The notes beneath the pieces were generated by a model that was given only the letters and a program-made list of their open reading frames with translations, did no database searches and had not been told where the DNA came from. From contig CM106586.1 of NCBI GenBank assembly GCA_048013815.1, positions 7,936,001 to 8,000,000 on the forward strand: a stretch of DNA of 64,000 nt, written 5' to 3'. The position numbers and the translations under genes were made by a program. Shown here in pieces: positions 3,348 through 25,663 of the stretch (position 1 is its first letter; every line of letters begins with the position of its first letter). This DNA comes from Setoptus koraiensis. Taxonomy: Eukaryota; Animalia; Arthropoda.

Positions 3348-5143
3348 ATGTCCTATAGCCTATATGTTGGAGACTTGCCATACGATTGTGGCGACGACAA
3401 ATTGTATCAGATATTTTCTGAAAAATTCAAGAGCGTTCAAATGGTTTCAAGTAAGTAGCTAACTCGCCTAGTAGTGTTTCTTGCCATACCTACTTATCTC
3501 ACTTAACATCTCTTATCTATCATCTTTAATCTCGGCATCGTCTATTATCACATCTTTCTAACATTGTCTCAACACCATTATCGCTCTCTATTTACACCCC
3601 TCTTTGAATAAAAATAACAATTTTTGTCACAATTTTAGTTATTCGCAATGAGGATAAATCTAGTCGGGGATTCGGTTTTGTTAGGTTTGAAAACGAGATG
3701 GAGATGAAGTTAGCACTAAATCAGGATATACGTATTGACAATATCTTGCTCAGGACAGATGTTGCGAAGGCTACCGAATATCGAGACCGAAGAGAGAATA
3801 GATTTAGAAATAAGCATATCTCCAACTATAGTCAGCATCCTCATAATAACAATCATCATAACCATCACAACCATCACTATCCTAATAGTCATAGAGGTAA
3901 TAGTTCCGCTCCAAATAATACTTATGTAAATTCTAAAGCTCACCTGCCTGGTCACTATCACCAAAAGACAAACAACAATTTGTCGCCATCGGGCTCGACA
4001 GTGCTATCTACAGCGTCAGCGGCTTCGGCACCGGCTTCAACATCTGCAACACCACCCGCGCCTCCAACTGCTACAACAACCACATCTACAGCCGGAACAT
4101 CTGTAGCAGATAGAGTAAATAATAATAACGGTAATAATAATAATAATAATAGCAACACTAATAGTAACACCAATAGTGGCATCAATCAATCGCAACAGCG
4201 CCTGCACCAGAGGCAACAATTAACATCAACAGAAAATGCCCAAATTCTTTCAGAGGGTCACGCGATTCATCTAGCCGTTCCTAATCATCCTTCAAGTTCG
4301 ATGCAATTTGTTCCTGGTGATCCTTACTCTATGTCTAGCGCCCAGCATAACAATAATCATGCCAATCACACCACTGGAATAAACAAGCTATCTCGACCTC
4401 CAAGCCATATGAACCAACCTATGGCCTTTGTAGATTCTTATGGCATGTTTTATGATGCCTCTGGCATGCCTCTCAATATGGCGCCACCATTCAACCCGGC
4501 AGTCTCAATGCCTAGCGGCCCTATGCCGAATCACGGCGAAGGACAAATAGAGCAACCTACAGCTATGTTACCCACACCAAATGTATACTACCCTTACGGA
4601 CCTCCACCATCAGCTTTTGGCTATCCTCCTAATTCAATGTTGCCGCATTCCGTACCACAAGCGGTTCAACAGCAACATGGCCCATCAAATCCGTCCAGGT
4701 ACAATCACAATCAACAGGCAGGGAACGATGTCAATGGGGCCAATGGAGCTCAACAACCCCAACCACAGCAGCCTCTCTACTACATGAACTACTGGAATGG
4801 ACAGCCCTTCTATTATGATCAAGCAAATACTCCTGGTGGTCCACCGAGTATCTATCATCCTACCATCCATCCATTTTTTATGTCGAGTGCCGCCTTCTTA
4901 CCAAATGCTCAGACACCTCAGACTTTCAACACACAGCAACAACAGCAGCTACATCAAAATAGTGAAGTCACACCTAACCATCCACTAACCCGACGACAAC
5001 CATCTGCACCTCACCAGATGCCCTATGGTCATGGCGGTGAATTATCCAGTACGATCGTTAAGAATACAACAGCACCCTCTGTCGATATTCCTTCAGCAAC
5101 CTCATACAATATTGAATCTAGTAATACTAACAGTACAAATTAG
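3348..5143 (+). CDS. Single-RRM RNA-binding protein with long N/Q/P/Y-rich low-complexity tail (535 aa)
   Basis: join(3348..3450,3639..5143), gtaagt donor 3451, ttttag acceptor 3638, frame preserved. Spliced product MSYSLYVGDLPYDCGDDKLYQIFSEKFKSVQMVSIIRNEDKSSRGFGFVRFENE has RNP2 (LYVGDL) and RNP1 (RGFGFVRF). Confidence 0.85.
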
Positions 5144-6177: not shown

Positions 6178-7695
6178 ATGAACGCTGACCAACTGAATAG
6201 ATTTGCTGAATTGTTCTGTCATTTTAGTAGCTTAAATAAGGGCAATCTGAGAAGACAGTTCTATATAATATTCATATCGCTGATCACAATATTGATCAAT
6301 TTAGACTATAATCAATCATCTATCATATTTGACGATTCAGTAGATAGCCATACGCAGCAAGCAGAACAAGAGTACCAGAAACGACCAATTGTTAATAGTA
6401 GAGAACAATTGTATGTCACTTATGATATGGATCCACTACCAAACTATTCTGATCTCATGGATGCATCTTCATCATCACAAAGTAGTTCCCAACCAATATC
6501 TTCAGCTCCGGCGCCAACAACAACAGCCTCATCATCTAATACCGACACTCTTACACAAACAAGTCCAGTTTCGTCAGACAATTCAAATGTGTCTGGCATC
6601 AAGCCATCAGCAACAGCAATGAGTTTAATCAAGAATAGCATCCAAAACGTGGTCGGCCAAAGACAACAAAATCCTAATGGGATACAAATTGATGGAAACA
6701 TCAACATTGACGGGAGTACTAATAATCGGCCAAGCAATACCAACCAACCAGGTCTTTCGGGTTTCATCACGATAGACCCCGGGAACGCAACAACGTCCAA
6801 TGCATTTGCCTATTGGCCTGTAATATTTGCCGCACTTAAGACTGGTTCAGTCAAATTTGGTGCTGCTGGATTGAAAATTTTGAAATTGATCGCTTGGAAA
6901 AAAATCTACAAGATGCACCATCCTAGTTCAGCCGAGATAGTGGTGGAACAAGAGCCATCGAGAAAGAAGAGCAGAAGGCACGCAGATATGTCGCTATCTG
7001 GTGACAGGAAGAAATTGTCCAAACTATCAAATGGTTTTGGACCCTATAACAACTACGGCTTCCATGGCGGAACTGGTTTCATGAGCACTTCTGGCTCGTC
7101 AAACTATCCGAAGACAACTAAATACTATTCAACAGGTGAAGATTCGTCTGAAATATCTAACTATGGCGATTATTTGCAAGGGCGTCATTACACAACTTCC
7201 GGTGCAACACGACCCACGAATCGATATGTTCGCGGAGCCAAGTCTCTTGGTGGACATATTGGCAGTGGTAATTGGTATGCGGCTGAAGCCTCTAGTGCTA
7301 ACGCCATGACAATGCAACCATCATCAAACAGTGCACATGGCTTCGTGGGACCGAATGGCTGGCCATTGCCTAGTGAGTATATGAACATGATGTATCACAA
7401 TAACATTTTCGACAACTCGGCCGCTATGGCAGTTCAGAATGCTGTGAAGCTACCATCAACAGACCTCATGAGTACCTATGGCGATAATCCAGCCTATGGA
7501 ACTGATTGGATGATGTCATCAGAAGCCGAACCAATCGACGACTCGTATGGTGCCGGAACCAATTGGGATGGGGGTTCTCAGCAAGCAGATTCCGGATCGT
7601 CTTCATCTTCTTCGTCAACGGAAGAAAGCAATTCAGACAAGGAAGGCAAAAGCAAGACTATATCGGGTTCAAATTCCAACCAAGACGGAGATTGA
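6178..7695 (+). CDS. Uncharacterised Ser/Gly/Asn-rich secreted or signal-anchored protein (505 aa)
   Basis: Long intronless ORF, hydrophobic segment FYIIFISLITILINL near the N-terminus, internal Lys/hydrophobic motif KFGAAGLKILKLIAWKKIYKMHHP. No family recognised. Confidence 0.75.
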   Translation: MNADQLNRFAELFCHFSSLNKGNLRRQFYIIFISLITILINLDYNQSSIIFDDSVDSHTQQAEQEYQKRPIVNSREQLYVTYDMDPLPNYSDLMDASSSSQSSSQPISSAPAPTTTASSSNTDTLTQTSPVSSDNSNVSGIKPSATAMSLIKNSIQNVVGQRQQNPNGIQIDGNINIDGSTNNRPSNTNQPGLSGFITIDPGNATTSNAFAYWPVIFAALKTGSVKFGAAGLKILKLIAWKKIYKMHHPSSAEIVVEQEPSRKKSRRHADMSLSGDRKKLSKLSNGFGPYNNYGFHGGTGFMSTSGSSNYPKTTKYYSTGEDSSEISNYGDYLQGRHYTTSGATRPTNRYVRGAKSLGGHIGSGNWYAAEASSANAMTMQPSSNSAHGFVGPNGWPLPSEYMNMMYHNNIFDNSAAMAVQNAVKLPSTDLMSTYGDNPAYGTDWMMSSEAEPIDDSYGAGTNWDGGSQQADSGSSSSSSSTEESNSDKEGKSKTISGSNSNQDGD

Positions 7696-7841: not shown

Positions 7842-10277
7842 TCATTCTTTTAGTGTTGCAGAGTGTAACTCCTGGATCATTCTGAAATGTTTGGTCAGGG
7901 ACTCAGAGTCGGTTGGTGAATTGGCCACTTTGTCGCCTTTCTTTGAGTCACCCGACTGAGATATTTTTGCCGATGATGCTCGACCTAGGATAGATTGAGC
8001 AGGATATGATGACTCAGTAAAATAGTGAACACATTTGAGACGTTCGAGTAACTTTCTGAAGGCCTCTGATTGTGGCAACATCATAAGCAAGCTATACAAG
8101 CTTTTCAATAAGTAGTAATTATTGTCACTATCTAAAAGTTGAACTCGTATGAATGCAAATATAGGCGATTCAATCAGTTGGATTAATTTATCGATCTCAA
8201 TCAGAACCTCCAATGTAATGTCCATGTTAGAGATGACCATTACAAGATCATTTGCATGTCGATAGTGACCCGTCAGCAGACACAGAGATAGGGCGGCGAT
8301 AGGCGAATGACACCAAGCTTGATATAGGCTGAAAAATAATGACGCCAATCCAGACTCTTGATCCGTCCTCGAAGCGGATCGTAATCGTTGTCTCAATTTG
8401 AACAATTCTTGAGTTGTCAACAATATCTCGTTTAGTTTCTGAACCATGGTATATGCGAATTTGAGATCTTTTCTCTCGTCCTTCAATATAGTGGCGAACG
8501 ATCTATATATGCACTCGGGATCCAATATGCAGCAAAGATGAACTATGATAAAAGACCCTCTCTCGTTAAAAACAGTTTCCTCTTCCTTGAACCTGTCTAC
8601 GAGGGCCAGCACGAATCTATTGAAATTGATTGCGTCGAAACGGTTACTGTTAGAAACATTGATATCACTAGGTAAAGGACTGGTCGAGGAGGTCGGAGGT
8701 TGCATAGTTTTGTCTGCACTTCTTTGCTGTATTCTGGAAAAAGTGGTTCTCTTCTTTTCAGCCTCTTCTTTCACTGGTTTCAGTTTGGCAGTTTCTGCTC
8801 CATCCTTCGATGCATCACTACCCTCTATTCTGCAACTCAAACAGAAAATATCTATAATCACATTCAGAGTCGATTCGGCAACTTCGTCGCATTTATCTGA
8901 AAGAGTATCCAACAATACTTTGAATAACTTTGAGTCCAAATCTATACAGATCGTTTCCGGTCCGTTCGATTGTCTCAGTTGTCTAAACCATTCGAGTATA
9001 GCTAACTTGATGGTTGGGTGTTCATTCTGGTGTAATTCTTTCGAAAGAACTTCGATCAATGACTCCAATTCTATTTTCCATGGAAAAGACTCCGAACAAG
9101 AAGTTTTCCTTCTCAAGTTAATGATGTTGGTTACTTTCCCTTGCAGCTGGATGTTCACTACGGTTGCAGTTTCGCAGATATTCGCAATCATTGTGTTACT
9201 TGGCTGATAATGAAATGATTGATCTCGCGCCCGGCAGAGGATGCTATCTACCGGTAAATTAGTGTGGAAAGCTAAACACGGCAATATAGCTGTCAGAATG
9301 CCAGGTGCAAAATTGATGAGGTTTGCATCGCTTTCATCCATCAAACCAATAAATTCACGAAGCCACACTATAGCTGTATACCGAACAAGTTCCTCCTTGT
9401 CACTCTGCGAGTGAATGATCAAGATGTTTATCATGGAAGGCAATTCAAGTTTACTATTTGGTCTTGTTACAATTTCGTTGAGAAACTCTGACAAAACTGA
9501 CAGTGTTGAGGCCTTTATTTCTTCTGTGGCATCATGCAAGCAGGTGAACAGTCCATCTAAAAGTTGTGGCAAATGTATTATCAACTCGAAGTCTGGCACA
9601 GAATCTAGAAGTTTTATCCATGATATGATGAACATCTTTGCGAAAGGATTCTTAGTGTAGATGCATTCCCTCAGTCTTGGTACGAATGAACTCAAATCAA
9701 AGCCCTGATCTTCCGAGACTATGTCTCTGAGAAGTCTATCTAATAATATGGCGCCACTTCTCACGCTACTATCGGGATCAGCAATTATCTTGGCTAAGCA
9801 GTCGAATATTTCATTGAATATTGGCCTGATACTGGATCGTGCAACTTTTATGACATTATACAACGATTCACAAGCAAAGTAGCGCACCTTAATATCGGGA
9901 TCTATAACGCAGGTTAGTATGGCTTTTATGACACTAGTTAAAATATTAGATTGGTTAATTTGGTTATTAGATGTGGAATGGGTTGCTTGATATTGTCCAT
10001 TGGTGCTAACGGGCGGCGACTTGAGTGCTATCATAAGAGCAGCCAGCCCAATAAGTCCTCCTTTTCGAGCATTCGAATTTGTCGAGAAACAGAATTCCTG
10101 GCTCAAAACATTCACGAGCCTGTTTATCTGAGTGTAATTGTCATTTTGGCTGAAGTCCTTCACCATTTTTTCAATTTCAAAGGCCGCAACTTTTCTCTTG
10201 TCATATGATTTATCAGCCAGGGCTTTAACACAAGCTGCGCTCAATGGAGAGAATGTGGATGAAGTTTCCTCACTCAT
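7842..10277 (-). CDS. VAC14: VAC14 homologue, copy A
   Basis: ATG at 10277 (the track start is TTG). Motifs KALADKSYDKRKVAAFEIEKMV, RKGGLIGLAA, VRYFACESLYN, WCHSPIAALSLCLL, IDKLIQLIESPIF. Intronless. Confidence 0.95.
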   Translation of the reverse strand: MSEETSSTFSPLSAACVKALADKSYDKRKVAAFEIEKMVKDFSQNDNYTQINRLVNVLSQEFCFSTNSNARKGGLIGLAALMIALKSPPVSTNGQYQATHSTSNNQINQSNILTSVIKAILTCVIDPDIKVRYFACESLYNVIKVARSSIRPIFNEIFDCLAKIIADPDSSVRSGAILLDRLLRDIVSEDQGFDLSSFVPRLRECIYTKNPFAKMFIISWIKLLDSVPDFELIIHLPQLLDGLFTCLHDATEEIKASTLSVLSEFLNEIVTRPNSKLELPSMINILIIHSQSDKEELVRYTAIVWLREFIGLMDESDANLINFAPGILTAILPCLAFHTNLPVDSILCRARDQSFHYQPSNTMIANICETATVVNIQLQGKVTNIINLRRKTSCSESFPWKIELESLIEVLSKELHQNEHPTIKLAILEWFRQLRQSNGPETICIDLDSKLFKVLLDTLSDKCDEVAESTLNVIIDIFCLSCRIEGSDASKDGAETAKLKPVKEEAEKKRTTFSRIQQRSADKTMQPPTSSTSPLPSDINVSNSNRFDAINFNRFVLALVDRFKEEETVFNERGSFIIVHLCCILDPECIYRSFATILKDERKDLKFAYTMVQKLNEILLTTQELFKLRQRLRSASRTDQESGLASLFFSLYQAWCHSPIAALSLCLLTGHYRHANDLVMVISNMDITLEVLIEIDKLIQLIESPIFAFIRVQLLDSDNNYYLLKSLYSLLMMLPQSEAFRKLLERLKCVHYFTESSYPAQSILGRASSAKISQSGDSKKGDKVANSPTDSESLTKHFRMIQELHSATLKE

Positions 10278-10856
10278 CACTGCCCCGGATCTTGAAGACA
10301 ATCTTCTAAAGTCCAATAAAATAATAGTTTCTCGAACTGATGCCAACAAACAATCTCATGCAGCCGGTATGTTTAAGAAACGATCTTGATAGTTTGATGA
10401 AGATCCATAAAATCCATTATTTTCCCAATGAACACTATTGTTTTGAACACGTTGATTAGCCTATTTTTTTCAAAGTTCAGATTTTGCTAGCAAAAAATAA
10501 AATAAATATCACTTGTGCATGTTTGTTTACGTTCTGATGCAACAATGGGGTGTAACTGACAGGTTTTTATGTGATCAACTTGTCAATCGTAAGCAAATCA
10601 GAGCCACACTTTGCCATGTCGTGAAATAAACACACAGACACATGTTTGTTTTTCCCCTCATGCGATGCAAACTTTCTACTGCCTTGGATGGGGCAATCAA
10701 ACTCCAATCCGGGTCAGAGAGACGTTCAAATGAAAAAATAATAGAAACAATAATATTGAAAAATCCATACTCATTTTCTCCTTCATTCTATTCGATACAA
10801 TGATAGAAAATTTTAATTCTCCGCCACGAATGTAGATAAAAGAAATATTCAATAAT

Positions 10857-11629
10857 ATGTTTCTAATTTTCGGCCAATGTGCCGGCTACGCAGTGTGCAT
10901 AGTGATGGGCTTCAGTTTTCTCATACCATTCGGACAAAATTTAAATTCATTTAATGGCCACTGTCTATTATTCTCAGGAGGAAACTATTCCGAAAATGGA
11001 GGAAATTTCTACCCAGATTGGGCCAATCCAGCCTATTGTATATCAACGATGGTAACAGGGGTGATATCTGTCGCCGTTGCTATTGTGCAACTGATACGAT
11101 CACTGATGATGTTGGTTGCCAGGACAGAAAGGTAGGTCAAGCAAATTGTATATAGTGATGACGCTCATGTCGATCTAACCAGCTCTGATAAAAAAAAAAT
11201 CTGACATGTATATGTTTCAACATGTACAAAAATCTCTATCTTTTCTTATCTGTCGAAATTTAATGTCATCCCAGTTCATCGAAATCGGCGCTTGTAGAAG
11301 CAATTATGTCTGTCGTTATAACTTTGGCCATATTAACAAATGCCATTCTAGTCTCATATGGTTTCGCTTATTGGTGTGACAGAGTGGAACATCCATTCTC
11401 TAAAGGTTGTGAAGCCGCAGCTGTAAGCATGAAAGTGAGCGATAAGTCAATAAACCCCTCAGGTTTCTTTTATCAATTGGAAACAGTGCAATTTAGTATA
11501 TGGTCAGCCCTTGTCAGTTGGATCTTCATTCTGGCCTTTTGCGGAAGAAAGTTGTTCATACATCATGAGAGTGCTAACTTGATGGTTAGTATGGCAAGAG
11601 AAAGAAGAAGGTACAATACAATCATTTGA
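10857..11629 (+). CDS. TMEM179: TMEM179-family four-TM protein, copy A (209 aa)
   Basis: join(10857..11131,11275..11629), phase-2 GT-AG intron. Motifs GQCAGY, FNGHCLLFSGG, GFAYWCD, QFSIWSALVSW match the TMEM179 pattern. Confidence 0.85.
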
Positions 11630-11691
11630 AACACACATGACTCAATAATCAACAAATATAAATAATGGATTTATTATTAACAGTGTGACAT

Positions 11692-14214
11692 TCACATATC
11701 TGATCTCAATCTTGTGGAGTGCAACTCTTGAATCATCCTTAAATGTTTAGTCAACGCCTCTGAATCGGTTTGTGAGCTAGTCGACCTATCACTCTTTCTC
11801 ATCTCACTAGATTGTTGGGCCGCTCTTGCCGATGTGGCTCGACTCAGACTAGATTGAGATGAAGGAGGATAGGAGGTCTTAGAGAAGTTGGGCACGCATT
11901 TGAGACGACTTCGTAACTTTCTTAAAGCTTCCGATGGAGGTAGTATCATGAGCAAGCCATACAAAGTCTTCAATAAATAGTAGTTATTGTCACTATCTAA
12001 AAGTTGAACTCTTATGAATACAAAAATAGGCGATTCAATCAGTTGGATTAATTTATCGATCTCAATCAGAACCTCCAATGTAATGTCCATGTTAGAGATG
12101 ACCATTACAAGATCATTTGCATGTCGATAGTGACCCGTCAGCAGACACAGAGATAGGGCGGCGATAGGCGAATGACACCAAGCTTGATATAGGCTGAAAA
12201 ATAATGACGCCAATCCAGACTCTTGATCGGTCCTCGAAGCGGATCGTAATCGTTGTCTCAATTTGAACAATTCTTGAGTTGTCAACAATATCTCGTTTAG
12301 TTTCTGAACCATGGTATATGCGAATTTGAGATCTTTTCTCTCGTCCTTCAATATAGTGGCGAACGATCTATATATGCACTCGGGATCCAATATGCAGCAA
12401 AGATGAACTATGATAAAAGACCCTCTCTCGTTAAAAACAGTTTCCTCTTCCTTGAACCTGTCTACGAGGGCCAGCACGAATCTATTGAAATTGATTGCGT
12501 CGAAACGGTTACTGTTAGAAACATTGATATCACTAGGTAAAGGACTGGTCGAGGAGGTCGGAGGTTGCATAGTTTTGTCTGCACTTCTTTGCTGTATTCT
12601 GGAAAAAGTGGTTCTCTTCTTTTCAGCCTCTTCTTTCACTGGTTTCAGTTTGGCAGTTTCTGCTCCATCCTTCGATGCATCACTACCCTCTATTCTGCAA
12701 CTCAAACAGAAAATATCTATAATCACATTCAGAGTCGATTCGGCAACTTCGTCGCATTTATCTGAAAGAGTATCCAACAATACTTTGAATAACTTTGAGT
12801 CCAAATCTATACAGATCGTTTCCGGTCCGTTCGATTGTCTCAGTTGTCTAAACCATTCGAGTATAGCTAACTTGATGGTTGGGTGTTCATTTTGGTGTAA
12901 CTCTCTCGAAAGAACCTCGATCAATGACTCCAACTCTATTTTTGACGGAAAAGACTCTGTTAGGGGAGTGTTCTTCCTCGAGTTAATGATATTAGTCACT
13001 TTCTCTTGCAGCTGGATGTTCACTACGGTTGCAGTTTCGCAGATATTCGCAATCATTGTGTTACTTGGCTGATAATGAAATGACTGATCACGCGCCTGAC
13101 TCTGATTCTGACAGAGGATGCTATCTACCGGTAAATTAGTGTGGAAAGCTAAACACGGCAATATAGCTGTCAGAATGCCAGGTGCAAAATTGATGAGGTT
13201 TGCATCGCTTTCATCCATCAAACCAATAAATTCACGAAGCCACACTATAGCTGTATATCGAACAAGTTCCTCCTTGTCACTCTGCGAGTGAATGATCAAG
13301 ATGTTTATCATGGAAGGCAATTCAAGTTTACTATTTGGTCTTGTTACGATTTCGTTGAGAAACTCTGACAAAACTGACAGTGTTGAGGCCTTTATTTCTT
13401 CTGTGGCATCATGCAAGCAGGTGAACAGTCCATCTAAAAGTTGCGGCAAATGTATTATCAACTCGAAGTCTGGCACAGAATCTAGAAGTTTTATCCATGA
13501 TATGATGAACATCTTTGCGAAAGGATTCTTAGTGTAGATGCATTCCCTCAGTCTTTGTACGAACGATTCGACGTCAAAAGTTTGATCCTCTGAGACAATG
13601 TCCATCAACAGTCTGTCTAGTAATCTAGCTGCATTTCTCACATTACTATCGTGGTCTTCTATTATTTCTGCTAGGCCATCAAATATTTCATTGAATATTG
13701 GTTTGATACTAGATCTCGCCACTCTCACTACATTATACAACGACTCACAGGCATAGTATCTCACTCTGATGTCTGGATCTAGAACGCAGGTTAGAATGAA
13801 CCTAATGACATCAGTTAAAATATTCGTTTGAGTTTCTTGATTATTCGAATTAATATAAGGCGATTGATTCTGTCCACTAGTTTGTTTGTTACCAACAGGT
13901 GGTGTATTGAATGCTATTATGAGAGCAGCCAGTCCAATAAGTCCTCCTTTTCTGGCGTTTGGATTTGATGAGAGACAGAACTCTTTACTCAAAACATTTA
14001 CAAGCCGATTTATTTGAATGAAATTGTCATTCTGGCTGAAGTCCTTCACCATTTTTTCAATTTCAAAGGCCGCAACTTTTCTCTTGTCATATGATTTATC
14101 GGCCAGAGCTTTCACACATGCTGAACTCAACGGGGAATAAATGGATGATGTCTCTTCATTCATGACTGCCCTCGTTCCAGACAACAACCTTTGAACATCC
14201 TGGGGTGAATACAT
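11692..14214 (-). CDS. VAC14: VAC14 homologue, copy B
   Basis: Full-length intact ORF (ATG 14214 or 14163) with the same VAC14 motifs as copy A. Confidence 0.95.
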   Translation of the reverse strand: MYSPQDVQRLLSGTRAVMNEETSSIYSPLSSACVKALADKSYDKRKVAAFEIEKMVKDFSQNDNFIQINRLVNVLSKEFCLSSNPNARKGGLIGLAALIIAFNTPPVGNKQTSGQNQSPYINSNNQETQTNILTDVIRFILTCVLDPDIRVRYYACESLYNVVRVARSSIKPIFNEIFDGLAEIIEDHDSNVRNAARLLDRLLMDIVSEDQTFDVESFVQRLRECIYTKNPFAKMFIISWIKLLDSVPDFELIIHLPQLLDGLFTCLHDATEEIKASTLSVLSEFLNEIVTRPNSKLELPSMINILIIHSQSDKEELVRYTAIVWLREFIGLMDESDANLINFAPGILTAILPCLAFHTNLPVDSILCQNQSQARDQSFHYQPSNTMIANICETATVVNIQLQEKVTNIINSRKNTPLTESFPSKIELESLIEVLSRELHQNEHPTIKLAILEWFRQLRQSNGPETICIDLDSKLFKVLLDTLSDKCDEVAESTLNVIIDIFCLSCRIEGSDASKDGAETAKLKPVKEEAEKKRTTFSRIQQRSADKTMQPPTSSTSPLPSDINVSNSNRFDAINFNRFVLALVDRFKEEETVFNERGSFIIVHLCCILDPECIYRSFATILKDERKDLKFAYTMVQKLNEILLTTQELFKLRQRLRSASRTDQESGLASLFFSLYQAWCHSPIAALSLCLLTGHYRHANDLVMVISNMDITLEVLIEIDKLIQLIESPIFVFIRVQLLDSDNNYYLLKTLYGLLMILPPSEALRKLRSRLKCVPNFSKTSYPPSSQSSLSRATSARAAQQSSEMRKSDRSTSSQTDSEALTKHLRMIQELHSTRLRSDM

Positions 14215-15044: not shown

Positions 15045-16694
15045 TTACATATGATCCAGTACAAGGTCTGTGGCTTGAACTCTACGCCTCTTCCCTTCTT
15101 TTTCCTCTCTTCTCATAGCGATCCTTTGGGATCGCCTTCTTGGGCTCGTGTTCTGTTCTTCTAGTTCATTGGAATCATGAGTCCATCTAACAATTGTATT
15201 ATCCCAAGAGGAAGAGACCAATTCTGGGTAGTACGGGTGCCAAGATACATCTCTTACACAGGCTTTGTGACCTGAAAGTTGACGCACCTGTTTTCCTGTC
15301 AAGAGATCGTATATAACGACTTTACCTGTGCTACAACCAGTATAAACAAATCGTTGCCCTGTCGTGAATCTTGGTGAAAATCTAGCTCTTATGAGTGTGT
15401 CCTTGATTTCGTGGCCCCACATAGTCATGATAGAGGAATCTCCTTCCAATCTGACACATTTGTAGCAGGTACTGCCACCTAGAGGAGTCGCCCTCGTTTT
15501 TCGATTGCTAGATGAATAAGGCTTCCTTAGATCCCACAGCTTGATACACTCATCTTTACCATTTGTAATTAAATGGTGGCCGTCATCTCGTGGATCTATG
15601 TATGTTATTCCTAATCTGTGCCCGATGAGAACACCCACGGGTTTGCCAATAGCTTCATTCAAGCATCGAATGTCCCATATCTTGCATCTTCCATCATCTG
15701 AGGCGCTGTAAATTATTTGTGAGCTGGAATCAGCGAATGCTACGCAGTTTATATCGTCATAGTGAGCCTCTTCGATTCTTATTGCTAAATGTTTTCGTTC
15801 CAAGTCATAAATGTAAAGACTATTGTCATTTGTGCCATACAGAACTTTGTCACCCTGGCTTGAAAATCTCAAAGAAAATATACAAAATCTCGAGTTTCTA
15901 TTTGATGTTACACAGAAAGCCTCTTGATCATCTCCATTCTCCATATTGCACATGTGAAAACTGTCGCACCAACTAGAATATATAAAACGTCTACTATCTG
16001 GTGATATGTCCGCATCAATGATGGCCCAAGCAACATCACGTGCCGTAACTCTATTTATCAGTGTAAAATCATCTCTTGTGTCATAGATTCGAATATATCT
16101 ACTATTGCTGTCATCACTTGAGTTTAAGAAACGAGTTCCATCTTTTGAATAGAATCCCAAAAAGACTTTACCGTCGAATTTGTCCAAACTCTTTTCTGTT
16201 GGACGATTTGGAACAAATCTAGATGCTATGCGACACAGGTCTCCTTGTGTAAATAGTGACATTGACTTTCTTCTATGACATTCACTGATGCCAATTTGTC
16301 TATTTTTGAGCAATTTTATCATGGATGGCGCCTTGCTCTTCCTCCGGTCTGAAGCTATGGCAAGGGAAAAGAGACCAGAATCGAGCATAACTTGCTGACG
16401 CAACAAACTACAATTAACCTTATCCTGACTTGATAGAGTTTGAATCCCTGCTAAGTGGTCAGGTAGTTCATTGTGATTCTTTTTGATTCTAACATGGGCA
16501 GATTCTCCTGGTCTAGACGAGAGATCGAGGAATTCCATAAAATTATAGACTGGATTATCTCGATTCTCCACTGATATCCCGTCATCATCTGAAGCGTTAT
16601 TTAACGTTTCATCTCTGGGTATGTGATTTCTGCGCGTGTGATTAGCAAGTGTATTTGCAGATCGTTCATTTCGTCTATTGGCTGATTCAGACAT
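15045..16694 (-). CDS. DCAF11: DDB1- and CUL4-associated factor 11 (WDR23)
   Basis: WD40 protein with ITYIDPRDDGHHLITNGKDECIKLWDLRK, TLIRARFSPRFTTGQRFVYTGC and ACVRDVSWHPY. Confidence 0.93.
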   Translation of the reverse strand: MSESANRRNERSANTLANHTRRNHIPRDETLNNASDDDGISVENRDNPVYNFMEFLDLSSRPGESAHVRIKKNHNELPDHLAGIQTLSSQDKVNCSLLRQQVMLDSGLFSLAIASDRRKSKAPSMIKLLKNRQIGISECHRRKSMSLFTQGDLCRIASRFVPNRPTEKSLDKFDGKVFLGFYSKDGTRFLNSSDDSNSRYIRIYDTRDDFTLINRVTARDVAWAIIDADISPDSRRFIYSSWCDSFHMCNMENGDDQEAFCVTSNRNSRFCIFSLRFSSQGDKVLYGTNDNSLYIYDLERKHLAIRIEEAHYDDINCVAFADSSSQIIYSASDDGRCKIWDIRCLNEAIGKPVGVLIGHRLGITYIDPRDDGHHLITNGKDECIKLWDLRKPYSSSNRKTRATPLGGSTCYKCVRLEGDSSIMTMWGHEIKDTLIRARFSPRFTTGQRFVYTGCSTGKVVIYDLLTGKQVRQLSGHKACVRDVSWHPYYPELVSSSWDNTIVRWTHDSNELEEQNTSPRRRSQRIAMRREEKEGKRRRVQATDLVLDHM

Positions 16695-17512: not shown

Positions 17513-18248
17513 ATGTTTCTCATTGCCCAATGTATTGGATATGTGGCCTGTATAATATTAGGTCTCAGCTTTCTCATCCCTCTAGGACTAAATTTACATT
17601 CATTCAATGGCCGCTGTTTGTTATACTCAGGTGGAAACTACACCAACATCGGTGAATTCGAACCAGAATGGGCCAATCCAGTTTATTGCATATCAACCAT
17701 GACAATAGGTGTGATATCTGTCACTGTTGCTATTGTACAATTGATAAGGTCACTAATGATGCTAGTGGCAAGGACAGAAAGGTAAGTCAATCGAAAAGAG
17801 TGCAATCATGATGACCATGTCTATCCTATCAACTTTTTGAAATTAAACAAACCCACAATCTCAACTCGCCGTTTACGATCCCAGTTCATTTAAATCCGCT
17901 TTTGTAGAAACAGTTATGTCTATCATTATAACTTTGACAATACTAACGAATGCCATTCTAGTCTCAGCCGGATTCGCTTATTGGTGTTCCAAAGTAGAAA
18001 TCAGATGGAGTAGCTGTGAGAGAGCAGCTACCCTGATAAAAATCATCAACGATAACCCAATCGACCCATCAGGATTCTTTTTGGAAATGGAAACGGTGCA
18101 TTTCAGCATCTGGTCGGCCTTCGCTAGTTGGATTTTCATACTGACAATTTCCGGTAGTAAATTATTCATTCACCACGAAAGCGCCAACTTGATGGTCAGT
18201 ATGGCCAGAGACAGGAGAAGGTACGACTTGCAAACAGATCTCGAGTGA
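17513..18248 (+). CDS. TMEM179: TMEM179-family protein, copy B (210 aa)
   Basis: join(17513..17781,17885..18248); intron at the same codon and phase as copy A; colinear protein. Confidence 0.85.
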
Positions 18249-19654: not shown

Positions 19655-22387
19655 AACTGAAAGACTCAATAATAAAATAGTGATTTTGTAATTGTAAGAT
19701 TTTTAATTTGATGTGTAGGATGATGTAGATATAAAATAGGTGAATTCATATCACAACTTGACTCTAGCCATGATATTCATCGACTGGTGCCTATATGTCA
19801 CCTCATTTTTTCCCATAGAGGCGTTACGCTCACCGTGAACACAGGTGACAAGGAGCGCCGCCCTTGCGGTTATTTTTTGATTTAATTTTGGTGTATTGTT
19901 ACAAACGATTTGCAATAGTGAAGTCGACGCGACTTGGGTCGACATTCACTTGTTGTCACATTGTTTCATTTGGAGAGCTTGTGTCAGTTGAGCTTGTGAA
20001 CATGGCTAGACACAGAGATTAAGCTACCATTGATCAATCCGACGTCACTATTGATCAATTCTGTAATTTAACAGGCGATCTCGATGCGATCAAGAGATTT
20101 GCCAGTCAGCAGAAAAAGCAGTTGTCATGTTGCGATAGTTAAATCATATATTTATGGGCTGTATTTTATCGTCACAGAGTAGTTGCCCCTTGTAGTATGC
20201 GTTACTTTTACAAAGTGGCATCTATCCGCTAGCTGCTATCTAACATTCTGGCGACCAGTCGGACACATCCCATATATCATGTGTGCTCTGTTGTGTGAGC
20301 CGGCCCAAATAGGCCCAGTAAATCCATTGCCGGCGCTTAGTTTAATTGCAGAGTGCATGCCAAGAACGTGGTGAAGTCACGTCTCTCGCCTGCCTTGGAA
20401 ATGGCGTCTAGCAAGTAAACTGTCGACATTACAAGTTAACACGCGATCAATTTTCTTGACAAACTCACTCATTTGTAGTTGGCGTTTGTGGAGCTACTTC
20501 AACGAGCAGTCAATCTCATCGGATGAACGAAATCGCTTGATGCATCGCTGCCGGCCCCAAATTGAGCCGAAACGCCTATCGCTGACAAGAGATTGGCCCC
20601 GAAAAGAGAGAAAAATTCAAAAACACTCAGCAGTCACAAGTGTCAGCCACGCAGCCAAGCAATCGGATAATGTACCATTGGCCTGATCTGCAGCAATTGA
20701 TGAAACAATCACTCGCGAACGCGCTCAAACTGCTCAACAGAACAAACGCTAGCTGTTAAGGGCGCGGGGGAGGGCCCCTTAGCATTCAACCACCGGGGAT
20801 GCCAGTCTCTAGCAGTCAGACTCTAGCAGCCAGACTCTAACAGCCAGAGTCTGTTATGCTGCCACGGAGAGTGTATCGGCCCCAAGACACCCACTCGAGC
20901 CAAAAGCGATTGTTATTATTGTCCAGCCAGTCTAATGAGAGCTAGTTGTTGATGGTGCTAATCTGACGGTTCACTGAGACAACTGCCATTATCAGATTAG
21001 CTGTACAGGCCATCATTTGGCGTGTTTGTGTGCTGGTTGTAGGACACTAATCAGTGCGGGCGATTTAATTGATTTGTTCAATCTTGTTGCCTGTGTGTCT
21101 ATGATAATATTTATTATACATTGCAGTAGGGAGTGGCATGTTTAGTTTGTAGTTGTTGTCGTTGTTGATGGTGTTTGTCGTAGCTGCTTAACTGTACTCT
21201 GTGTAGTGCAGTGCTAGCCTGACAATGGCCCCAAGTCGATATAATGAAATAGATTGCAAGTTTTTATATTATTTCGTTATTAGTTTATTGCATGGCACGA
21301 GGGTTGTGTCGTTAGACAGCCAATTGGACCAGTCCGGCAAACTGGTCTTTCAATTATCTATTAGTGTCTGGTGCCGGACCAGTCAACTATAAACAACGGC
21401 CGAGAGACAATAGAATAGCGGTGCAAGCCGCCCAGCGAGTGGAGCCCTGGGCGCAGTTAGCGCTAGTTAGGCCAACTAGCGCTAAGCTAAACGCAAAAGA
21501 CAGCTAGATGTGACCAGACTTGACCGTGCCAAATGTATTACCAGTAATTTCTTGTATGGCTCTATCGGCCCAATAATTGGCCGTGTTGTGTTGTATTGGT
21601 GTGGCCGGCATTTAGTCAATTGGTCAGTTAAAAATAGAACCATAGGCTGGCTGTTGGAGTCGCAACACTGTGGCAGCTTTGCAACAACCGGCTGTGAAAT
21701 TAGTTGATAACAGTTGTAGCGCAGTTAAATGGATACTGCAAACTGTACTGGCCAGTGTGAGGACCAAAAGCGACGACCCATGATTAGATTAGCCGAGCGA
21801 CAGCAGCAGCAGCACCGCCACCAGCCAGAGAAGCGACCCAAAGAAGAGAAATATCATGATGATGACATTACGTAACCAGACACAGGAGCCTGGTTATTGT
21901 TGTTGGCTGTGTCTGAGCACCCGAGACATAGGGCGCGAACGGGGCCCAGTTGCCAGCACAAAGGACAAAGTTGACATGTTATGAGACCGGACACTCGCAT
22001 TGAGGCGCTCGCCAGTGGGGCCCACTGGCCGGGGCTTGGCCAGTGGGCTTGATGATGCAAGCGTGTATTAGAGTGTGTGCTTCTGCGCACTGAACACACC
22101 GGGCCCGTGTAGTGGCATGGCTTTCGGTGGTGCCAACCACCAAAAGTCTAGACGAAAAGTATAAAAGGATGGCAACTGTTTGCAAACTATTTAGATGTTG
22201 TTTCTTAAACTTGAACGCGGGATCCAAGCAACATTCTCGTCGCGTTGTTTGCTCATTGTGTCACTGGCACCCTGCGCCTGCAATGAATGCCGTCCGCCAA
22301 GCGGCAAACAATAATAGTAATTTTTCGCTCGTTTTTTTCCATCATCTTATCTCTACTGCTTGTGTGTGTGTCTAATAAAAGGGGCCA

Positions 22388-22460
22388 CTTGATATATATA
22401 TACTTGATATATATATACTTGATATATATATACTTGATATATATATATACACTTGATATG
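22388..22460. repeat. 15-bp tandem repeat (cttgatatatatata)x4+
   Basis: Direct reading of the sequence. Confidence 0.85.
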
Positions 22461-24134
22461 TATAGACCGCTGACTAGGTGCATTCAATTATAAGCTTGCG
22501 AGTGGCCATTATGAGTGAGACAAGTGAATAAATGAAGGCACCAGCAGCCACGGTTTTTGGCCTCATTTTGCGTGGCCCCTCATTCTTGTACTCATGCACT
22601 AACTATGTGCTGATGCCATTTTATCCGCCATTATTATTCGCTACTATCATCGAGTTTGGCGCTCATGTGTGAGATAGCGAGCCAGACGGACAGATAGCGA
22701 GTTAGGCGGTGAGCGAGTGAGTGTGAGCGAGAGAGACACCGAGAATAAATAAATAAATTCCTGACCTCGCCGATAATAACTTTTTGTCCAGTCTGTCGGC
22801 TACATTCGGCTACAGTATCGGGCTTATATGTTTGCTTATACATTGTGGATATAATGCCATCGGTGGCGCTGCTCGTGCCTCCGAGCAACGACGCATCCAA
22901 CAAGCGCCGTGCAAACAGCAAACACACTCAAGAAAAGGGGCCCGTCATGACATAATTCTATCTATTATATTGACACATACTCACCAGTGCACTCAGTCAC
23001 AGATGCAACCAATGACGGCGCTTATTGACGACGGCGCCGGATAATGAGCTAAAGGCTTCCGTTTATAACTTGCTGATGACTCCATCTTGCGTACGCGCTA
23101 CTTATGCATGGGGGCGCCAGTTGGCCCGCAACCGCCAAATGCGACCGTGCTCTGGGCCGCAGACCGACGGTTTACACAAAGTTTGCATGATTTAATGGCC
23201 AGCCAGTGGGCCGAATGGTCGAGCAATATAAGCAGACTGATAGCAATCCAAGGTCGCCACTGTGCATTGGCTCTGGCCGCCGCCGCCGCCAGGAAGTTTG
23301 TCGGCCAGTGGGCGCTGGCAGCAGCGCCGCAGTAATCCGCTTATGGCCGCCGTTGCCGTTATCAGCTTCTCGGCCCCATCGGACGCCGGGCAAACAAATG
23401 GCGCCAAGTGAGACGCGGTTGTTACAGTTTGACGTTGCGTAATCGCACGCACACTTGCTCCGGTCGGCGCACCAACGTCGGCCAGCGCGCGATAGCGCGC
23501 AATACGTGGCCCATTACTGTTACTATTAGCGCACGTGGTGCTGGCCCCACGGGCGAGCGGTAAACGTGGCTGCACGTCACGAGACGCCGTAATGGTCTAG
23601 TCAAATTGAACCATGCAAATATTATTTGGTGTGTGCGTGTGCGCGTGCAAAAGCGAGATTGGCCGCCGATATTGAATGGAATAACAATCGCGAATAATGA
23701 TTCAGATCGGAAGGGATTAGAAGTTAGCGATCGCCTGTGAGCATTTGCAATTTGGGCTTGCCGCTGCGGCTGGCGCCGTTGCCGATAGCGCACTCAAGTT
23801 GCGGCTGGCAAGCTAACGGGATTTTGCAGCCGGCCGAACACTTCCAATTGACAGTTGACAATCGAGCGCGCGAGCGCGCGCATTCCTTACAAATTGTAAG
23901 TTACAATTGAAACAACTTAAAGAGATAGACGCAAAGAGAGAGCGAATTTCGAACAAGCTCGCCAATACATTATCTTGGATTCTCTTGCTCCAGCGGGCCC
24001 ACTGTTCGCTGACACAAACACAGGCGGACAGTTGCAAAGTGGCGAGCCAGCGCCATGTAATTGTGTCGCGCCAGACAAGTTCAAGTGGCCGAGACCCTGG
24101 CGGTCGTTGGTGTTGCTGTTGTGTGACTTGAGTC

Positions 24135-24170
24135 CCAATCTGGCCAATCTGGCCAATCTGGCCAATCTGG
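24135..24170. repeat. 9-bp tandem repeat (ccaatctgg)x4
   Basis: Direct reading of the sequence. Confidence 0.85.
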
Positions 24171-25663
24171 CTGCAATCTCGCGCCTGTGCAACAGTGACA
24201 CCCACTGACCATTCTATTATAGAATCTCTGCGTGGGCCGATGATGGCTCCATTGGCCAAATCTTATTCTTGTCAAACTTAACAAACCATGGGCTGCGTAG
24301 GAGGTGATGGCGCACGCGCAACCACTTTGTCAGTTGCCAGTCTGTCCGCTTTGCACGAGTATAAATTATTCTGATGGCGGCGAGCCTTGCACGGGCCTCT
24401 CTTGCCAGTTGGCGGTTGTTTGGTCGGACACACCGAAGCTGCAAACAAGCGCCAACAATGGCTATTTTGGGCGCCACGCAATGGCGATGGTGCCAATTGG
24501 GCCACGAGCAACACCAGAATGGATCATGTGGTGCTCCTTTGAATTACAACTCGCGCGCGCGCGAGACAACCAGCACCGCATACCCTCAGGCCTATACACG
24601 ACGCCGAGTCGCCCAACGTGCCCAATGTGCCGAAAGGGGTCCCGTCTGAGTTGATCGACACGAGCGCACGGGCCCCACATACTTGCTTACATGCGTTTCA
24701 TCGTATCTGGCAGCAGTCTGCATCTAGTGACAGCGGTGCCGGGCAACAGCAACTCGATACAGTAAGAAGCTATACAAGAATGTGTGTGTGTAGAGAACCG
24801 TCAAAAGAAACCACGAACAAAGGAATCGCTGATGATGACTCGCCAGACAACTAATGAGCCTAGCTAAATAAGTGAAAAGGAAATGATATTATGTTTGTCG
24901 GTTAGCCGCAACTTGACCCAGGCGCTCTCGTACAAATATGGAACGAGTCACATCAGACCAGTTGGTCGCTTGTTTGCCTTGTTTCGCGCCCACTGGCGAG
25001 CCGTTTGTCGAGATGCTAGCTGCTGGCACTGATACAAAATCTAAATATAACAACTATATCCAACTGTGCTGACCATATCCACACATACTGACCACATCTA
25101 GACACACTTGACCGCGGCTCGCTCGTCCCGTCAAGCTCGGCCTGTGGTGCGGGCTCGCGTTGAGCCGACAATTAAGTGGCAAGCAACAATATTCCAACTC
25201 CAAGTTGACCCGTTGAGCACACACTCACAATCAAATCAACAGAGGCACGTAGCCAGCGACTTTGCCCGCCAGAAATGCTCAACTGCGCTCGAGCGCCAAT
25301 CCATCAGAATCATCATCAGCGAGCGCCGACGCCCATCTACGAAGCCAGCGGACCCCATCGTGGCTTGAGTCGTCTCGAGTGAAATCAGTCGGCTCACTCG
25401 ATAGCGCTCTTGTAAGCGAGAGTTTCGTCGTGCAGCGCCAAGTGTCAGAATCATGCACTTCAACCGTGTCAACATGAAGCGAACATGATCGAGCAACCAG
25501 TTCCAATCTGGATAGTCGCTTGACTTGTCACCGCCGCTAATATCATCATATCGTATTAGTGATACAACACAAAAACAACAACAACGACAACGACAACAAC
25601 AACAACACGATGTTTGTTTGCGTATGACACACAAACAACTAGTGAGACATATACAACAGATAC

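What the first reader, a model, noticed from the sequence alone, without database searches (positions are those of the whole stretch)
7842..14214. Two intact VAC14 paralogues forming a mosaic of near-identical and diverged tracts
VAC14, the scaffold of the PIKfyve-FIG4 complex, is usually single copy. Here A 8161-9026 and B 12026-12891 (866 bp) differ at one synonymous site by my comparison. A ~9235-9678 vs B ~13112-13555 differ at about 3 sites, and a 68-bp tract (A 10147-10214, B 14033-14100) is identical. In contrast, most of the first ~200 codons, a patch at A 9027-9140, an indel (LCRARD vs LCQNQSQARD) and the C-terminal ~70 aa are clearly diverged. This is the pattern of an old duplication with patchy recent gene conversion. 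Inference: the homogenised core would allow mixed oligomers, while the divergent N-terminal HEAT repeats and C-termini could recruit different partners, giving two PI(3,5)P2-regulatory complexes.
Basis: partly seen in the sequence, partly recalled or inferred. Interest (0 to 1): 0.75.

Follow-up and report, generated by a model that had tools for sequence, protein, structure and literature searches.

The report
Two VAC14 genes patched by gene conversion
A gall mite carries two neighbouring, intact copies of the usually single-copy lysosomal scaffold gene VAC14; the copies are old, but their middle parts keep being copied over each other, a well-known process called gene conversion, so the case is real but ordinary.

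Summary
Two intact, intronless VAC14 genes lie head-to-tail on the minus strand: A at 7845-10277 (811 aa) and B at 11695-14163 (823 aa). Both carry the Vac14_Fab1_bd and Vac14_Fig4_bd domains, and they are the only VAC14 copies in this 48.8-Mb genome, probably that of the eriophyoid mite Setoptus koraiensis.

The mosaic is sharp. The first ~200 codons and the last ~110 codons have dS of 1.3-1.6 with dN/dS of about 0.11. Two core tracts, of 444 bp and 866 bp, have dS of 0.03 and 0.005.

New evidence supports an old segmental duplication. A small two-exon membrane-protein gene between the copies has its only paralogue 6.6 kb away, at dS of about 1.06. This dates the duplication without using VAC14.

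The identity also covers a 63-residue disordered loop, so protein constraint does not explain it. Recurrent interlocus gene conversion is the best explanation.

The functional idea of two PI(3,5)P2 complexes is untested. I found one intact PIKfyve plus a broken partial copy, and one FIG4-like gene. Both VAC14 copies have diverged symmetrically.

One caveat concerns the assembly. If the species is right, it was built from noisy long reads and polished with short reads, which may exaggerate the core identity.

The scan has noted similar mosaics at four other gene pairs in this genome (F-box, Toll, Doa/CLK, POU).

The parts
7842..10277 (-). VAC14 copy A, intronless CDS of 811 aa from the shared Met at 10277 to the stop at 7842-7844
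   Evidence: ORF. Pfam Vac14_Fab1_bd and Vac14_Fig4_bd. Best named relatives are mite and tick VAC14.
11692..14163 (-). VAC14 copy B, intronless CDS of 823 aa from the shared Met at 14163. The ORF stays open up to an ATG at 14214.
   Evidence: AF2 model is an all-helical HEAT solenoid, pTM 0.66.
8161..9026 (-). Conversion tract 1 in A. Its partner is B 12026-12891. 866 bp, 1 synonymous difference, dS 0.005. It includes the 63-residue disordered loop.
12026..12891 (-). Conversion tract 1 in B
9140..9218 (-). Conversion tract 2 in A, 79 bp identical to B 13005-13083
9235..9678 (-). Conversion tract 3 in A. Its partner is B 13112-13555. 444 bp, 3 synonymous differences, dS 0.03.
13112..13555 (-). 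Conversion tract 3 in B
10147..10214 (-). Short identical tract 4 in A, 68 bp, partner B 14033-14100, inside the diverged N-terminal part. It encodes the most conserved N-terminal motif.
9679..10277 (-). Diverged N-terminal ~200 codons of A. Partner is B 13556-14163. dS 1.31, dN/dS 0.11. Covers HEAT 1-5 and the Pfam Fab1-binding region.
9027..9139 (-). Diverged island inside the core in A, about 80% identical to B 12892-13004. It lies in a linker that varies among orthologues.
9219..9234 (-). Indel junction. A lacks 12 nt that B has at 13084-13111 (QNQS). It falls in a predicted disordered loop.
7845..8160 (-). Diverged C-terminal ~106 codons of A. Partner is B 11695-12025. dS 1.6, dN/dS 0.12. 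Contains the last HEAT helices, a disordered tail and a terminal helix.
10857..11629 (+). Gene X1, a small two-exon predicted membrane-protein gene between the two VAC14 copies (exon ORFs 10857-11135 and 11306-11629)
   Evidence: No Pfam family.
17513..18248 (+). Gene X2, the only paralogue of X1 in the genome. 70% nt and 72% aa identity, dS 1.06, dN/dS 0.18, same splice sites. It marks the old segmental duplication.
15045..16694 (-). WD40-repeat gene between VAC14-B and X2. It has no counterpart or remnant beside copy A.

Best explanation
An old segmental tandem duplication in the lineage of this eriophyoid mite copied VAC14 together with a neighbouring small membrane-protein gene. Both VAC14 copies stayed intact and under purifying selection. 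Since then, non-allelic (interlocus) gene conversion has repeatedly overwritten the central ~60% of one copy with the other. It left at least four tracts (866, 444, 79 and 68 bp) that are identical or nearly so. The first ~200 codons, a 114-bp island, and the last ~110 codons have not been converted for a long time. At about 25% nucleotide divergence they are probably no longer substrates for homologous pairing. Shown here: the duplication, its age relative to the tracts, constraint on both copies, and the mosaic. Inferred: the conversion mechanism itself, that both copies are expressed, and that the identical core (which includes most of the FIG4-binding and self-association half) lets them co-assemble.
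For: 1. Segment-wise Nei-Gojobori estimates give dS of 1.31 (N-terminal) and 1.61 (C-terminal), against 0.032 and 0.005 in the cores. Boundaries are abrupt at the scale of a 30-codon window.
2. At 4-fold sites, 49-52% differ in the ends against 1-4% in the cores, permutation p<5e-5.
3. Homology stops at the CDS edges, so the non-coding flanks have diverged beyond recognition, as expected for an old duplication.
4. There is an independent age marker. X1 (10857-11629) has its only genomic paralogue X2 at 17513-18248, with dS 1.06 and dN/dS 0.18.
5. The 866-bp tract includes residues 492-554 of copy B. These are predicted disordered and have no consensus among orthologues, yet they are identical at the nucleotide level, so protein constraint cannot explain the identity.
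6. All 4 differences inside the cores are synonymous (P=0.002 if random). They are therefore real substitutions filtered by selection, not sequencing errors.
7. In a tree built from the diverged segments only, A and B are sisters (100/99) with equal branches of 0.19, so the duplication is lineage-specific and divergence is symmetric (identities).
8. There are no N runs in the window.
Against: No reads were available. If the genome is Setoptus koraiensis, it was assembled from PacBio CLR reads of a pool of at least 100,000 wild mites and polished twice with short reads (PMC11920263). Such polishing can erase paralogue-specific variants in already similar tracts, so the 99.3-99.9% identity, and hence the word 'recent', may be overstated. 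No second species with both copies was available, so tract-wise phylogenetic discordance could not be shown. There is no clear GC3 rise in the tracts of the kind GC-biased conversion would give. Expression of either copy is unknown.
Confidence: 0.8

Rival explanations
1. This is partly an assembly or polishing artefact. The two genes are real paralogues, but the near-perfect identity of the cores was produced or exaggerated when short reads from both copies were used to polish both. The true core divergence would then be a few per cent.
For: The probable source assembly used noisy CLR reads, Flye, and two rounds of NextPolish on a pooled, 1.13% heterozygous sample. The scan noted similar mosaics at four other paralogue pairs in this genome, which could reflect a systematic effect.
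Against: Short reads cannot be mis-mapped across about 25% divergence, so polishing cannot create the contrast or the sharp boundaries. It could only turn roughly 97-99% into about 100%. The four surviving differences are all synonymous (P=0.002), as expected of real evolved differences. The copies lie in unique flanks with a unique gene between them. Even under this rival the cores are far younger than the ends, so conversion is still needed.
Confidence: 0.1
2. The mosaic is kept by selection (subfunctionalisation). Conversion is tolerated in the core but selected against in the N-terminal PIKfyve/regulator-binding HEAT repeats and in the C-terminus, because the two proteins have acquired different partners or regulation. 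They would form mixed or alternative scaffolds. This is an add-on to the best explanation, not an alternative to conversion.
For: The diverged N-terminal block coincides with the whole Pfam Vac14_Fab1_bd region. It also coincides with HEAT 1-5, where yeast and mouse mutations affect Fab1, Vac7 and Atg18 binding (PMC2600653). The copies differ at 13 of 86 columns that are at least 80% conserved among orthologues. Both copies have been kept intact over dS greater than 1.
Against: dN/dS is only 0.11-0.12 in the diverged parts. Derived changes are symmetric, 7 vs 10 in the N-terminal segment and 2 vs 4 in the C-terminal one. Departures from conserved columns are not significantly more frequent than in the core: 14 of 84 vs 12 of 118. 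Only one intact PIKfyve and one FIG4-like gene are available as partners. A purely neutral divergence barrier gives the same picture.
Confidence: 0.12
3. The identical tracts are conserved by constraint at the nucleotide level, for example an overlapping antisense gene or an RNA element, rather than by conversion.
For: A 220-aa antisense ORF lies inside the core of both copies (8545-9207 and 12410-13072).
Against: An antisense open frame of that length is expected by chance given the protein and its codon usage (P=0.23 in 2,000 synonymous shuffles). It has no Pfam family. Keeping 866 bp with one change while neighbouring synonymous sites are saturated would need an unknown and extreme constraint.
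Confidence: 0.02

Closest known systems
Animal VAC14 (ArPIKfyve), the HEAT-repeat scaffold of the PIKfyve-VAC14-FIG4 complex
   Same: Both copies have the two defining Pfam domains and an all-helical HEAT solenoid. Their best named relatives are mite, tick and insect VAC14 at 40-42% identity.
   Different: There are two copies instead of the usual one. The genes are intronless and rather long, at 811 and 823 aa. They share a lineage-specific Q/N/S/T-rich loop after HEAT 2 and a long disordered loop in the middle.
Interlocus gene conversion between tandem duplicates (classical cases recalled from my own knowledge: primate gamma-globin genes, red/green opsins, RHD/RHCE)
   Same: The paralogues are old. 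Internal tracts of near identity have sharp borders and are flanked by diverged sequence on both sides. Synonymous sites are homogenised.
   Different: Nothing differs in kind. The gene concerned, a normally single-copy oligomeric scaffold, is unusual.
Other mosaic paralogue pairs noted by this scan in the same genome (F-box, Toll, Doa/CLK, POU)
   Same: The same patchwork of near-identical and diverged tracts.
   Different: I did not re-examine those loci. The F-box case was reported to involve at least five copies, whereas here there are exactly two.

Membership tests
VAC14 | N-terminal Vac14_Fab1_bd domain (PF12755) | tested here: met
   copy A E=5e-31, copy B E=5e-28. Both are full length over the 97-position model and above the curated cut-off.
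VAC14 | C-terminal Vac14_Fig4_bd domain (PF11916) | tested here: met
   copy A E=1e-63, copy B E=4e-63, covering model positions 2-179 of 179.
VAC14 | All-helical HEAT-repeat solenoid | tested here: met
   the AF2 model of copy B has 33 helices and no sheets, with pLDDT of at least 87 over most repeats and pTM 0.66.
VAC14 | Closest relatives are VAC14 orthologues of related animals | tested here: met
   1073 hits. The named ones are 'protein VAC14 homolog' of oribatid mites, ticks, insects and others.
VAC14 | Binds PIKfyve and FIG4 and self-associates into a pentamer | not testable with these tools
   Needs biochemistry. The partner genes do exist in the genome: one intact PIKfyve and one FIG4-like gene.
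Interlocus gene conversion | Tracts whose synonymous divergence is far below that of the flanking parts of the same gene pair | tested here: met
   dS 0.005-0.03 against 1.3-1.6, p<5e-5.
Interlocus gene conversion | Identity is not explained by protein constraint | tested here: met
   a 63-residue disordered loop that varies among orthologues is identical at the nucleotide level. The antisense ORF is a chance one.
Interlocus gene conversion | An independent marker shows that the duplication is older than the tracts | tested here: met
   the co-duplicated X1/X2 pair has dS 1.06. Non-coding flanks are unalignable.
Interlocus gene conversion | Tract-wise phylogenetic discordance against orthologous pairs in a second species | not testable with these tools
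   The nearest available relative is 47% identical.
Interlocus gene conversion | Read-level confirmation that both copies and their identical tracts exist | not testable with these tools
   No reads were available. The assembly method was read from PMC11920263.

The most novel reading that the evidence does not exclude
Selection keeps two VAC14 isoforms whose identical cores let them co-assemble into mixed pentamers. Their different N-terminal HEAT repeats (the PIKfyve and regulator interface) and C-termini would tune how the single PIKfyve and single FIG4 are recruited or regulated. That would give the mite a stoichiometry-tunable PI(3,5)P2 machine, with gene conversion acting to preserve assembly compatibility.
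Probability: 0.1. Interest if true: 0.55.

Novelty: new member of a known kind. Interest (0 to 1): 0.25.

Why it matters
VAC14 is a dosage-sensitive, normally single-copy scaffold. A lineage that has kept two constrained copies for a long time is a small natural experiment on how an oligomeric scaffold tolerates duplication. The locus is also a clean example of conversion tracts with an internal age control, the co-duplicated neighbour gene. It adds to signs that patchy conversion between paralogues is common in this compact mite genome. Beyond that, it illustrates a textbook process and opens no new question by itself.

Tried and rejected
1. Haplotypes placed in tandem: rejected. The flanks are unalignable, a unique gene lies between the copies, and 25% divergence at the ends is not allelic.
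2. Antisense 220-aa ORF inside the core as the cause of conservation: rejected as a chance ORF (P=0.23) with no Pfam family.
3. GC-biased conversion signature: GC3 is 0.43 in the cores against 0.35-0.40 in the ends, too weak to use.
4. Asymmetric divergence or neofunctionalisation: not seen.
5. Age difference between the 444-bp and 866-bp tracts: not significant (Fisher p=0.12).
6. A remnant of a second WD40 gene beside copy A: none found.
7. Mapping onto a solved VAC14 structure: no VAC14 sequence was found in the PDB copy.
8. The papers of Lees et al. 2020 and Alghamdi et al. 2013 are not held. Their points are cited second-hand from PMC12594618 and PMC6913149.
The metagenome scan gave one 46%-identical relative with a single VAC14 within 10 kb on either side and no shared neighbours.
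10. The Atlas look-up of the FIG4 candidate returned only generic SAC-domain clusters.
11. Gene X was searched exon by exon only.

Full report
WHAT IS THERE

On the minus strand of the window lie two long ORFs, 7842-10349 and 11692-14214. Their products are 87% identical over about 830 residues.

Both match the two Pfam families that define VAC14. Vac14_Fab1_bd scores E=5e-31 and 5e-28. Vac14_Fig4_bd scores E=1e-63 and 4e-63.

The best named relatives are 'protein VAC14 homolog' of oribatid mites, ticks and insects at 40-42% identity. The best unnamed relative is 47% identical.

Orthologues start at the position of a Met that both copies share. I therefore take the coding sequences as A = 7845-10277 (811 aa) and B = 11695-14163 (823 aa). 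Neither has a stop or frameshift, and neither needs an intron.

A six-frame search of the whole 48.8-Mb, two-contig assembly finds these two copies and no third.

Earlier notes of this scan call the organism a mite. The contig lengths (24,221,962 and 24,533,333 bases) fit the published assembly of the eriophyoid Setoptus koraiensis, which has two chromosomes and a scaffold N50 of 24.53 Mb (PMC11920263). This identification is an inference, not a proof.

CHECK OF THE OBSERVATION

- 866 bp with one difference
- 444 bp with three differences
- 68 bp with none
- 114 bp with 23 differences
- the 4-codon indel

I add a 79-bp identical tract at A 9140-9218 / B 13005-13083.

A codon alignment gives this map:

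| Segment | Size | Nucleotide identity | dS | dN/dS |
|---|---|---|---|---|
| N-terminal | 200 codons | 76.5% | 1.31 | 0.11 |
| Core 1 | 147 codons | 99.3% | 0.032 | no non-synonymous change |
| Middle (with indel and diverged island) | about 70 codons | not computed separately | 0.48 | not stated |
| Core 2 | 288 codons | 99.9% | 0.005 | no non-synonymous change |
| C-terminal | 106 codons | 72% | 1.61 | 0.12 |

At 4-fold degenerate sites, 28 of 57 differ in the N-terminal segment and 12 of 23 in the C-terminal segment. In the cores the figures are 2 of 55 and 1 of 105. The longest run of identical 4-fold sites is 79, whereas 20,000 permutations never exceeded 61. The mosaic is therefore real and is not a by-product of uneven protein constraint.

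WHY GENE CONVERSION

Four results point the same way.

First, nucleotide homology between the two loci stops within a few bases of the coding sequence (A 7861-10285, B 11717-14171). The non-coding flanks have diverged past recognition, which fits dS above 1 and does not fit a young duplication.

Second, there is an independent clock. The spacer between the copies holds a small two-exon gene, X1, with exon ORFs at 10857-11135 and 11306-11629. It has GT donors and CAG acceptors that are conserved in its paralogue. Its only other copy in the genome, X2, lies at 17513-18248. Counted exon by exon, X1 and X2 are 72% identical in protein, with dS 1.06 and dN/dS 0.18. That is the same order of age as the VAC14 ends.

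The original event was thus a segmental duplication that carried VAC14 and X. A WD40 gene (15045-16694) now sits between B and X2, and it has no remnant beside A. Either it was lost from one unit or it moved in later; I cannot say which.

Third, the 866-bp tract includes residues 492-554 of copy B. The AlphaFold model leaves these disordered (pLDDT about 28), and the orthologue alignment shows no consensus there. Perfect nucleotide identity in such a loop cannot come from selection on the protein.

Fourth, internal tracts bounded on both sides by old sequence, in two copies that are both retained, need double exchange events. That means conversion, not a single unequal crossover.

The tracts are very young relative to the duplication. 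Core dS is about 0.4% (core 2) and 2% (core 1) of the dS at the ends, which is at or below the 1.13% heterozygosity reported for the probable source population. The difference in age between the two large tracts is not significant.

BOTH COPIES ARE CONSTRAINED

dN/dS is about 0.11 in the unconverted parts.

All four differences inside the cores are synonymous (P=0.002 for random changes).

In a maximum-likelihood tree built from the diverged segments only, A and B are sisters (support 100/99). They sit on a long common stem and have equal terminal branches of 0.19.

Polarising the differences with 40 orthologues gives 7 derived changes in A against 10 in B in the N-terminal part, and 2 against 4 in the C-terminal part.

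Each copy departs from strongly conserved columns at 14 of 84 positions in the N-terminal part. In the cores the figure is 12 of 118, which is not a significant excess.

So the duplication is specific to this lineage among all available sequences, and neither copy looks like a decaying or racing gene.

FUNCTIONAL READING

Jin et al. 2008 (PMC2600653) mapped the binding regions in yeast and mouse. Fab1/PIKfyve and Vac7 bind HEAT 1-10, Vac7/Atg18 bind the loops of HEAT 2-3, and a HEAT 4 mutation breaks Fab1 binding. FIG4 binds HEAT 10-21.

The C-terminal domain is also said to mediate self-association (PMC6913149 citing Alghamdi 2013). The complex is one Fab1 and one Fig4 on a Vac14 pentamer (PMC12594618 citing Lees 2020).

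Here the unconverted N-terminal block, B residues 1-203, covers the entire Pfam Fab1-binding region and the first five or so HEAT repeats. The homogenised core covers the remaining N-terminal-half repeats and most of the FIG4-binding domain. The last ~45 residues of that domain, a disordered tail and a terminal helix are diverged.

However, I found only one intact PIKfyve: a 1507-aa ORF with Cpn60_TCP1 and PIP5K domains at C1:9924289-9928812. I also found one FIG4-like gene of 915 aa with a SAC domain only.

The second PIKfyve-like locus, 48 kb away from the intact gene, is a rearranged set of fragments. They are 95-98.6% identical to pieces of the intact gene, so it is not a second kinase gene.

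With symmetric, purifying evolution of both VAC14 copies, the default reading is neutral. Once the ends passed a divergence threshold, they stopped being converted, and the frontier has been moving inwards. I give about 0.1 to an actively selected two-isoform system.

CAVEATS

No reads could be examined. If the species identification is right, the assembly was made from PacBio CLR reads of a pool of at least 100,000 wild mites and polished twice with short reads. This can erase paralogue-specific variants within tracts that are already very similar. The exact 99.3-99.9% figures, and the claim that conversion is very recent, may be somewhat inflated.

Polishing cannot create the contrast with 25%-diverged neighbours or the sharp borders. 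The window has no N runs.

The scan has noted the same kind of mosaic at four other paralogue pairs of this genome: F-box, Toll, Doa/CLK and POU. This means either that conversion is generally active in this compact genome or, less likely, that a systematic artefact exists. I did not re-examine those loci.

TOOLS AND SOURCES THAT WERE NOT AVAILABLE

- The one relative with context, L020, is 46% identical. It has a single VAC14 within 10 kb on either side and shares no neighbours with this locus.
- No VAC14 sequence was found in the PDB copy.
- The papers of Lees 2020 and Alghamdi 2013 are not held.
- Gene X was analysed exon by exon.

VERDICT

The functional interpretation is unsupported but not excluded. 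This is a clean new instance of a well-known process in an unusual gene, of modest interest.

Noticed in passing
L019:3797-6192 (G000:C1 about 9975796-9978191): A partial, rearranged second copy of PIKfyve lies 48 kb from the intact gene (L018:290-4813). Three pieces, corresponding to residues 711-822, 814-879 and 1255-1491, are 95-98.6% identical in DNA. One 275-aa ORF still holds the C-terminal part of the kinase domain. It looks like a young fragmentary duplicate or pseudogene.
   Followed up: partly
L018:290-4813: The intact PIKfyve ORF (1507 aa) shows Cpn60_TCP1 and PIP5K domains but no FYVE domain, and it begins at a TTG. An upstream exon carrying the FYVE finger is likely, or the domain has been lost.
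   Followed up: no
L017:3102-6695 (G000:C2:7923101-7926694, about 9-13 kb before the window start): A Sac2/INPP5F-type phosphoinositide phosphatase gene (1197 aa, Syja_N plus hSac2) lies about 17 kb from the VAC14 pair. This is probably coincidence.
   Followed up: no
window 10857-11629 and 17513-18248: X1 and X2 encode a small predicted multi-pass membrane protein with no Pfam family when searched exon by exon. Both are intact and constrained (dN/dS 0.18). Their identity is unknown.
   Followed up: partly
window 8545-9207 and 12410-13072 (+): A 220-aa antisense ORF lies inside the VAC14 core of both copies. Synonymous-shuffle controls show it is expected by chance (P=0.23), and it has no Pfam family.
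   Followed up: yes
window 20000-28000: A G+C-rich block (0.45-0.50 against about 0.40 elsewhere) contains a 674-aa ORF at 25664-27688.
   Followed up: no
window 6178-7695 (+) and 3698-5143 (+): Two long ORFs (505 and 481 aa) next to VAC14-A have no Pfam family.
   Followed up: no
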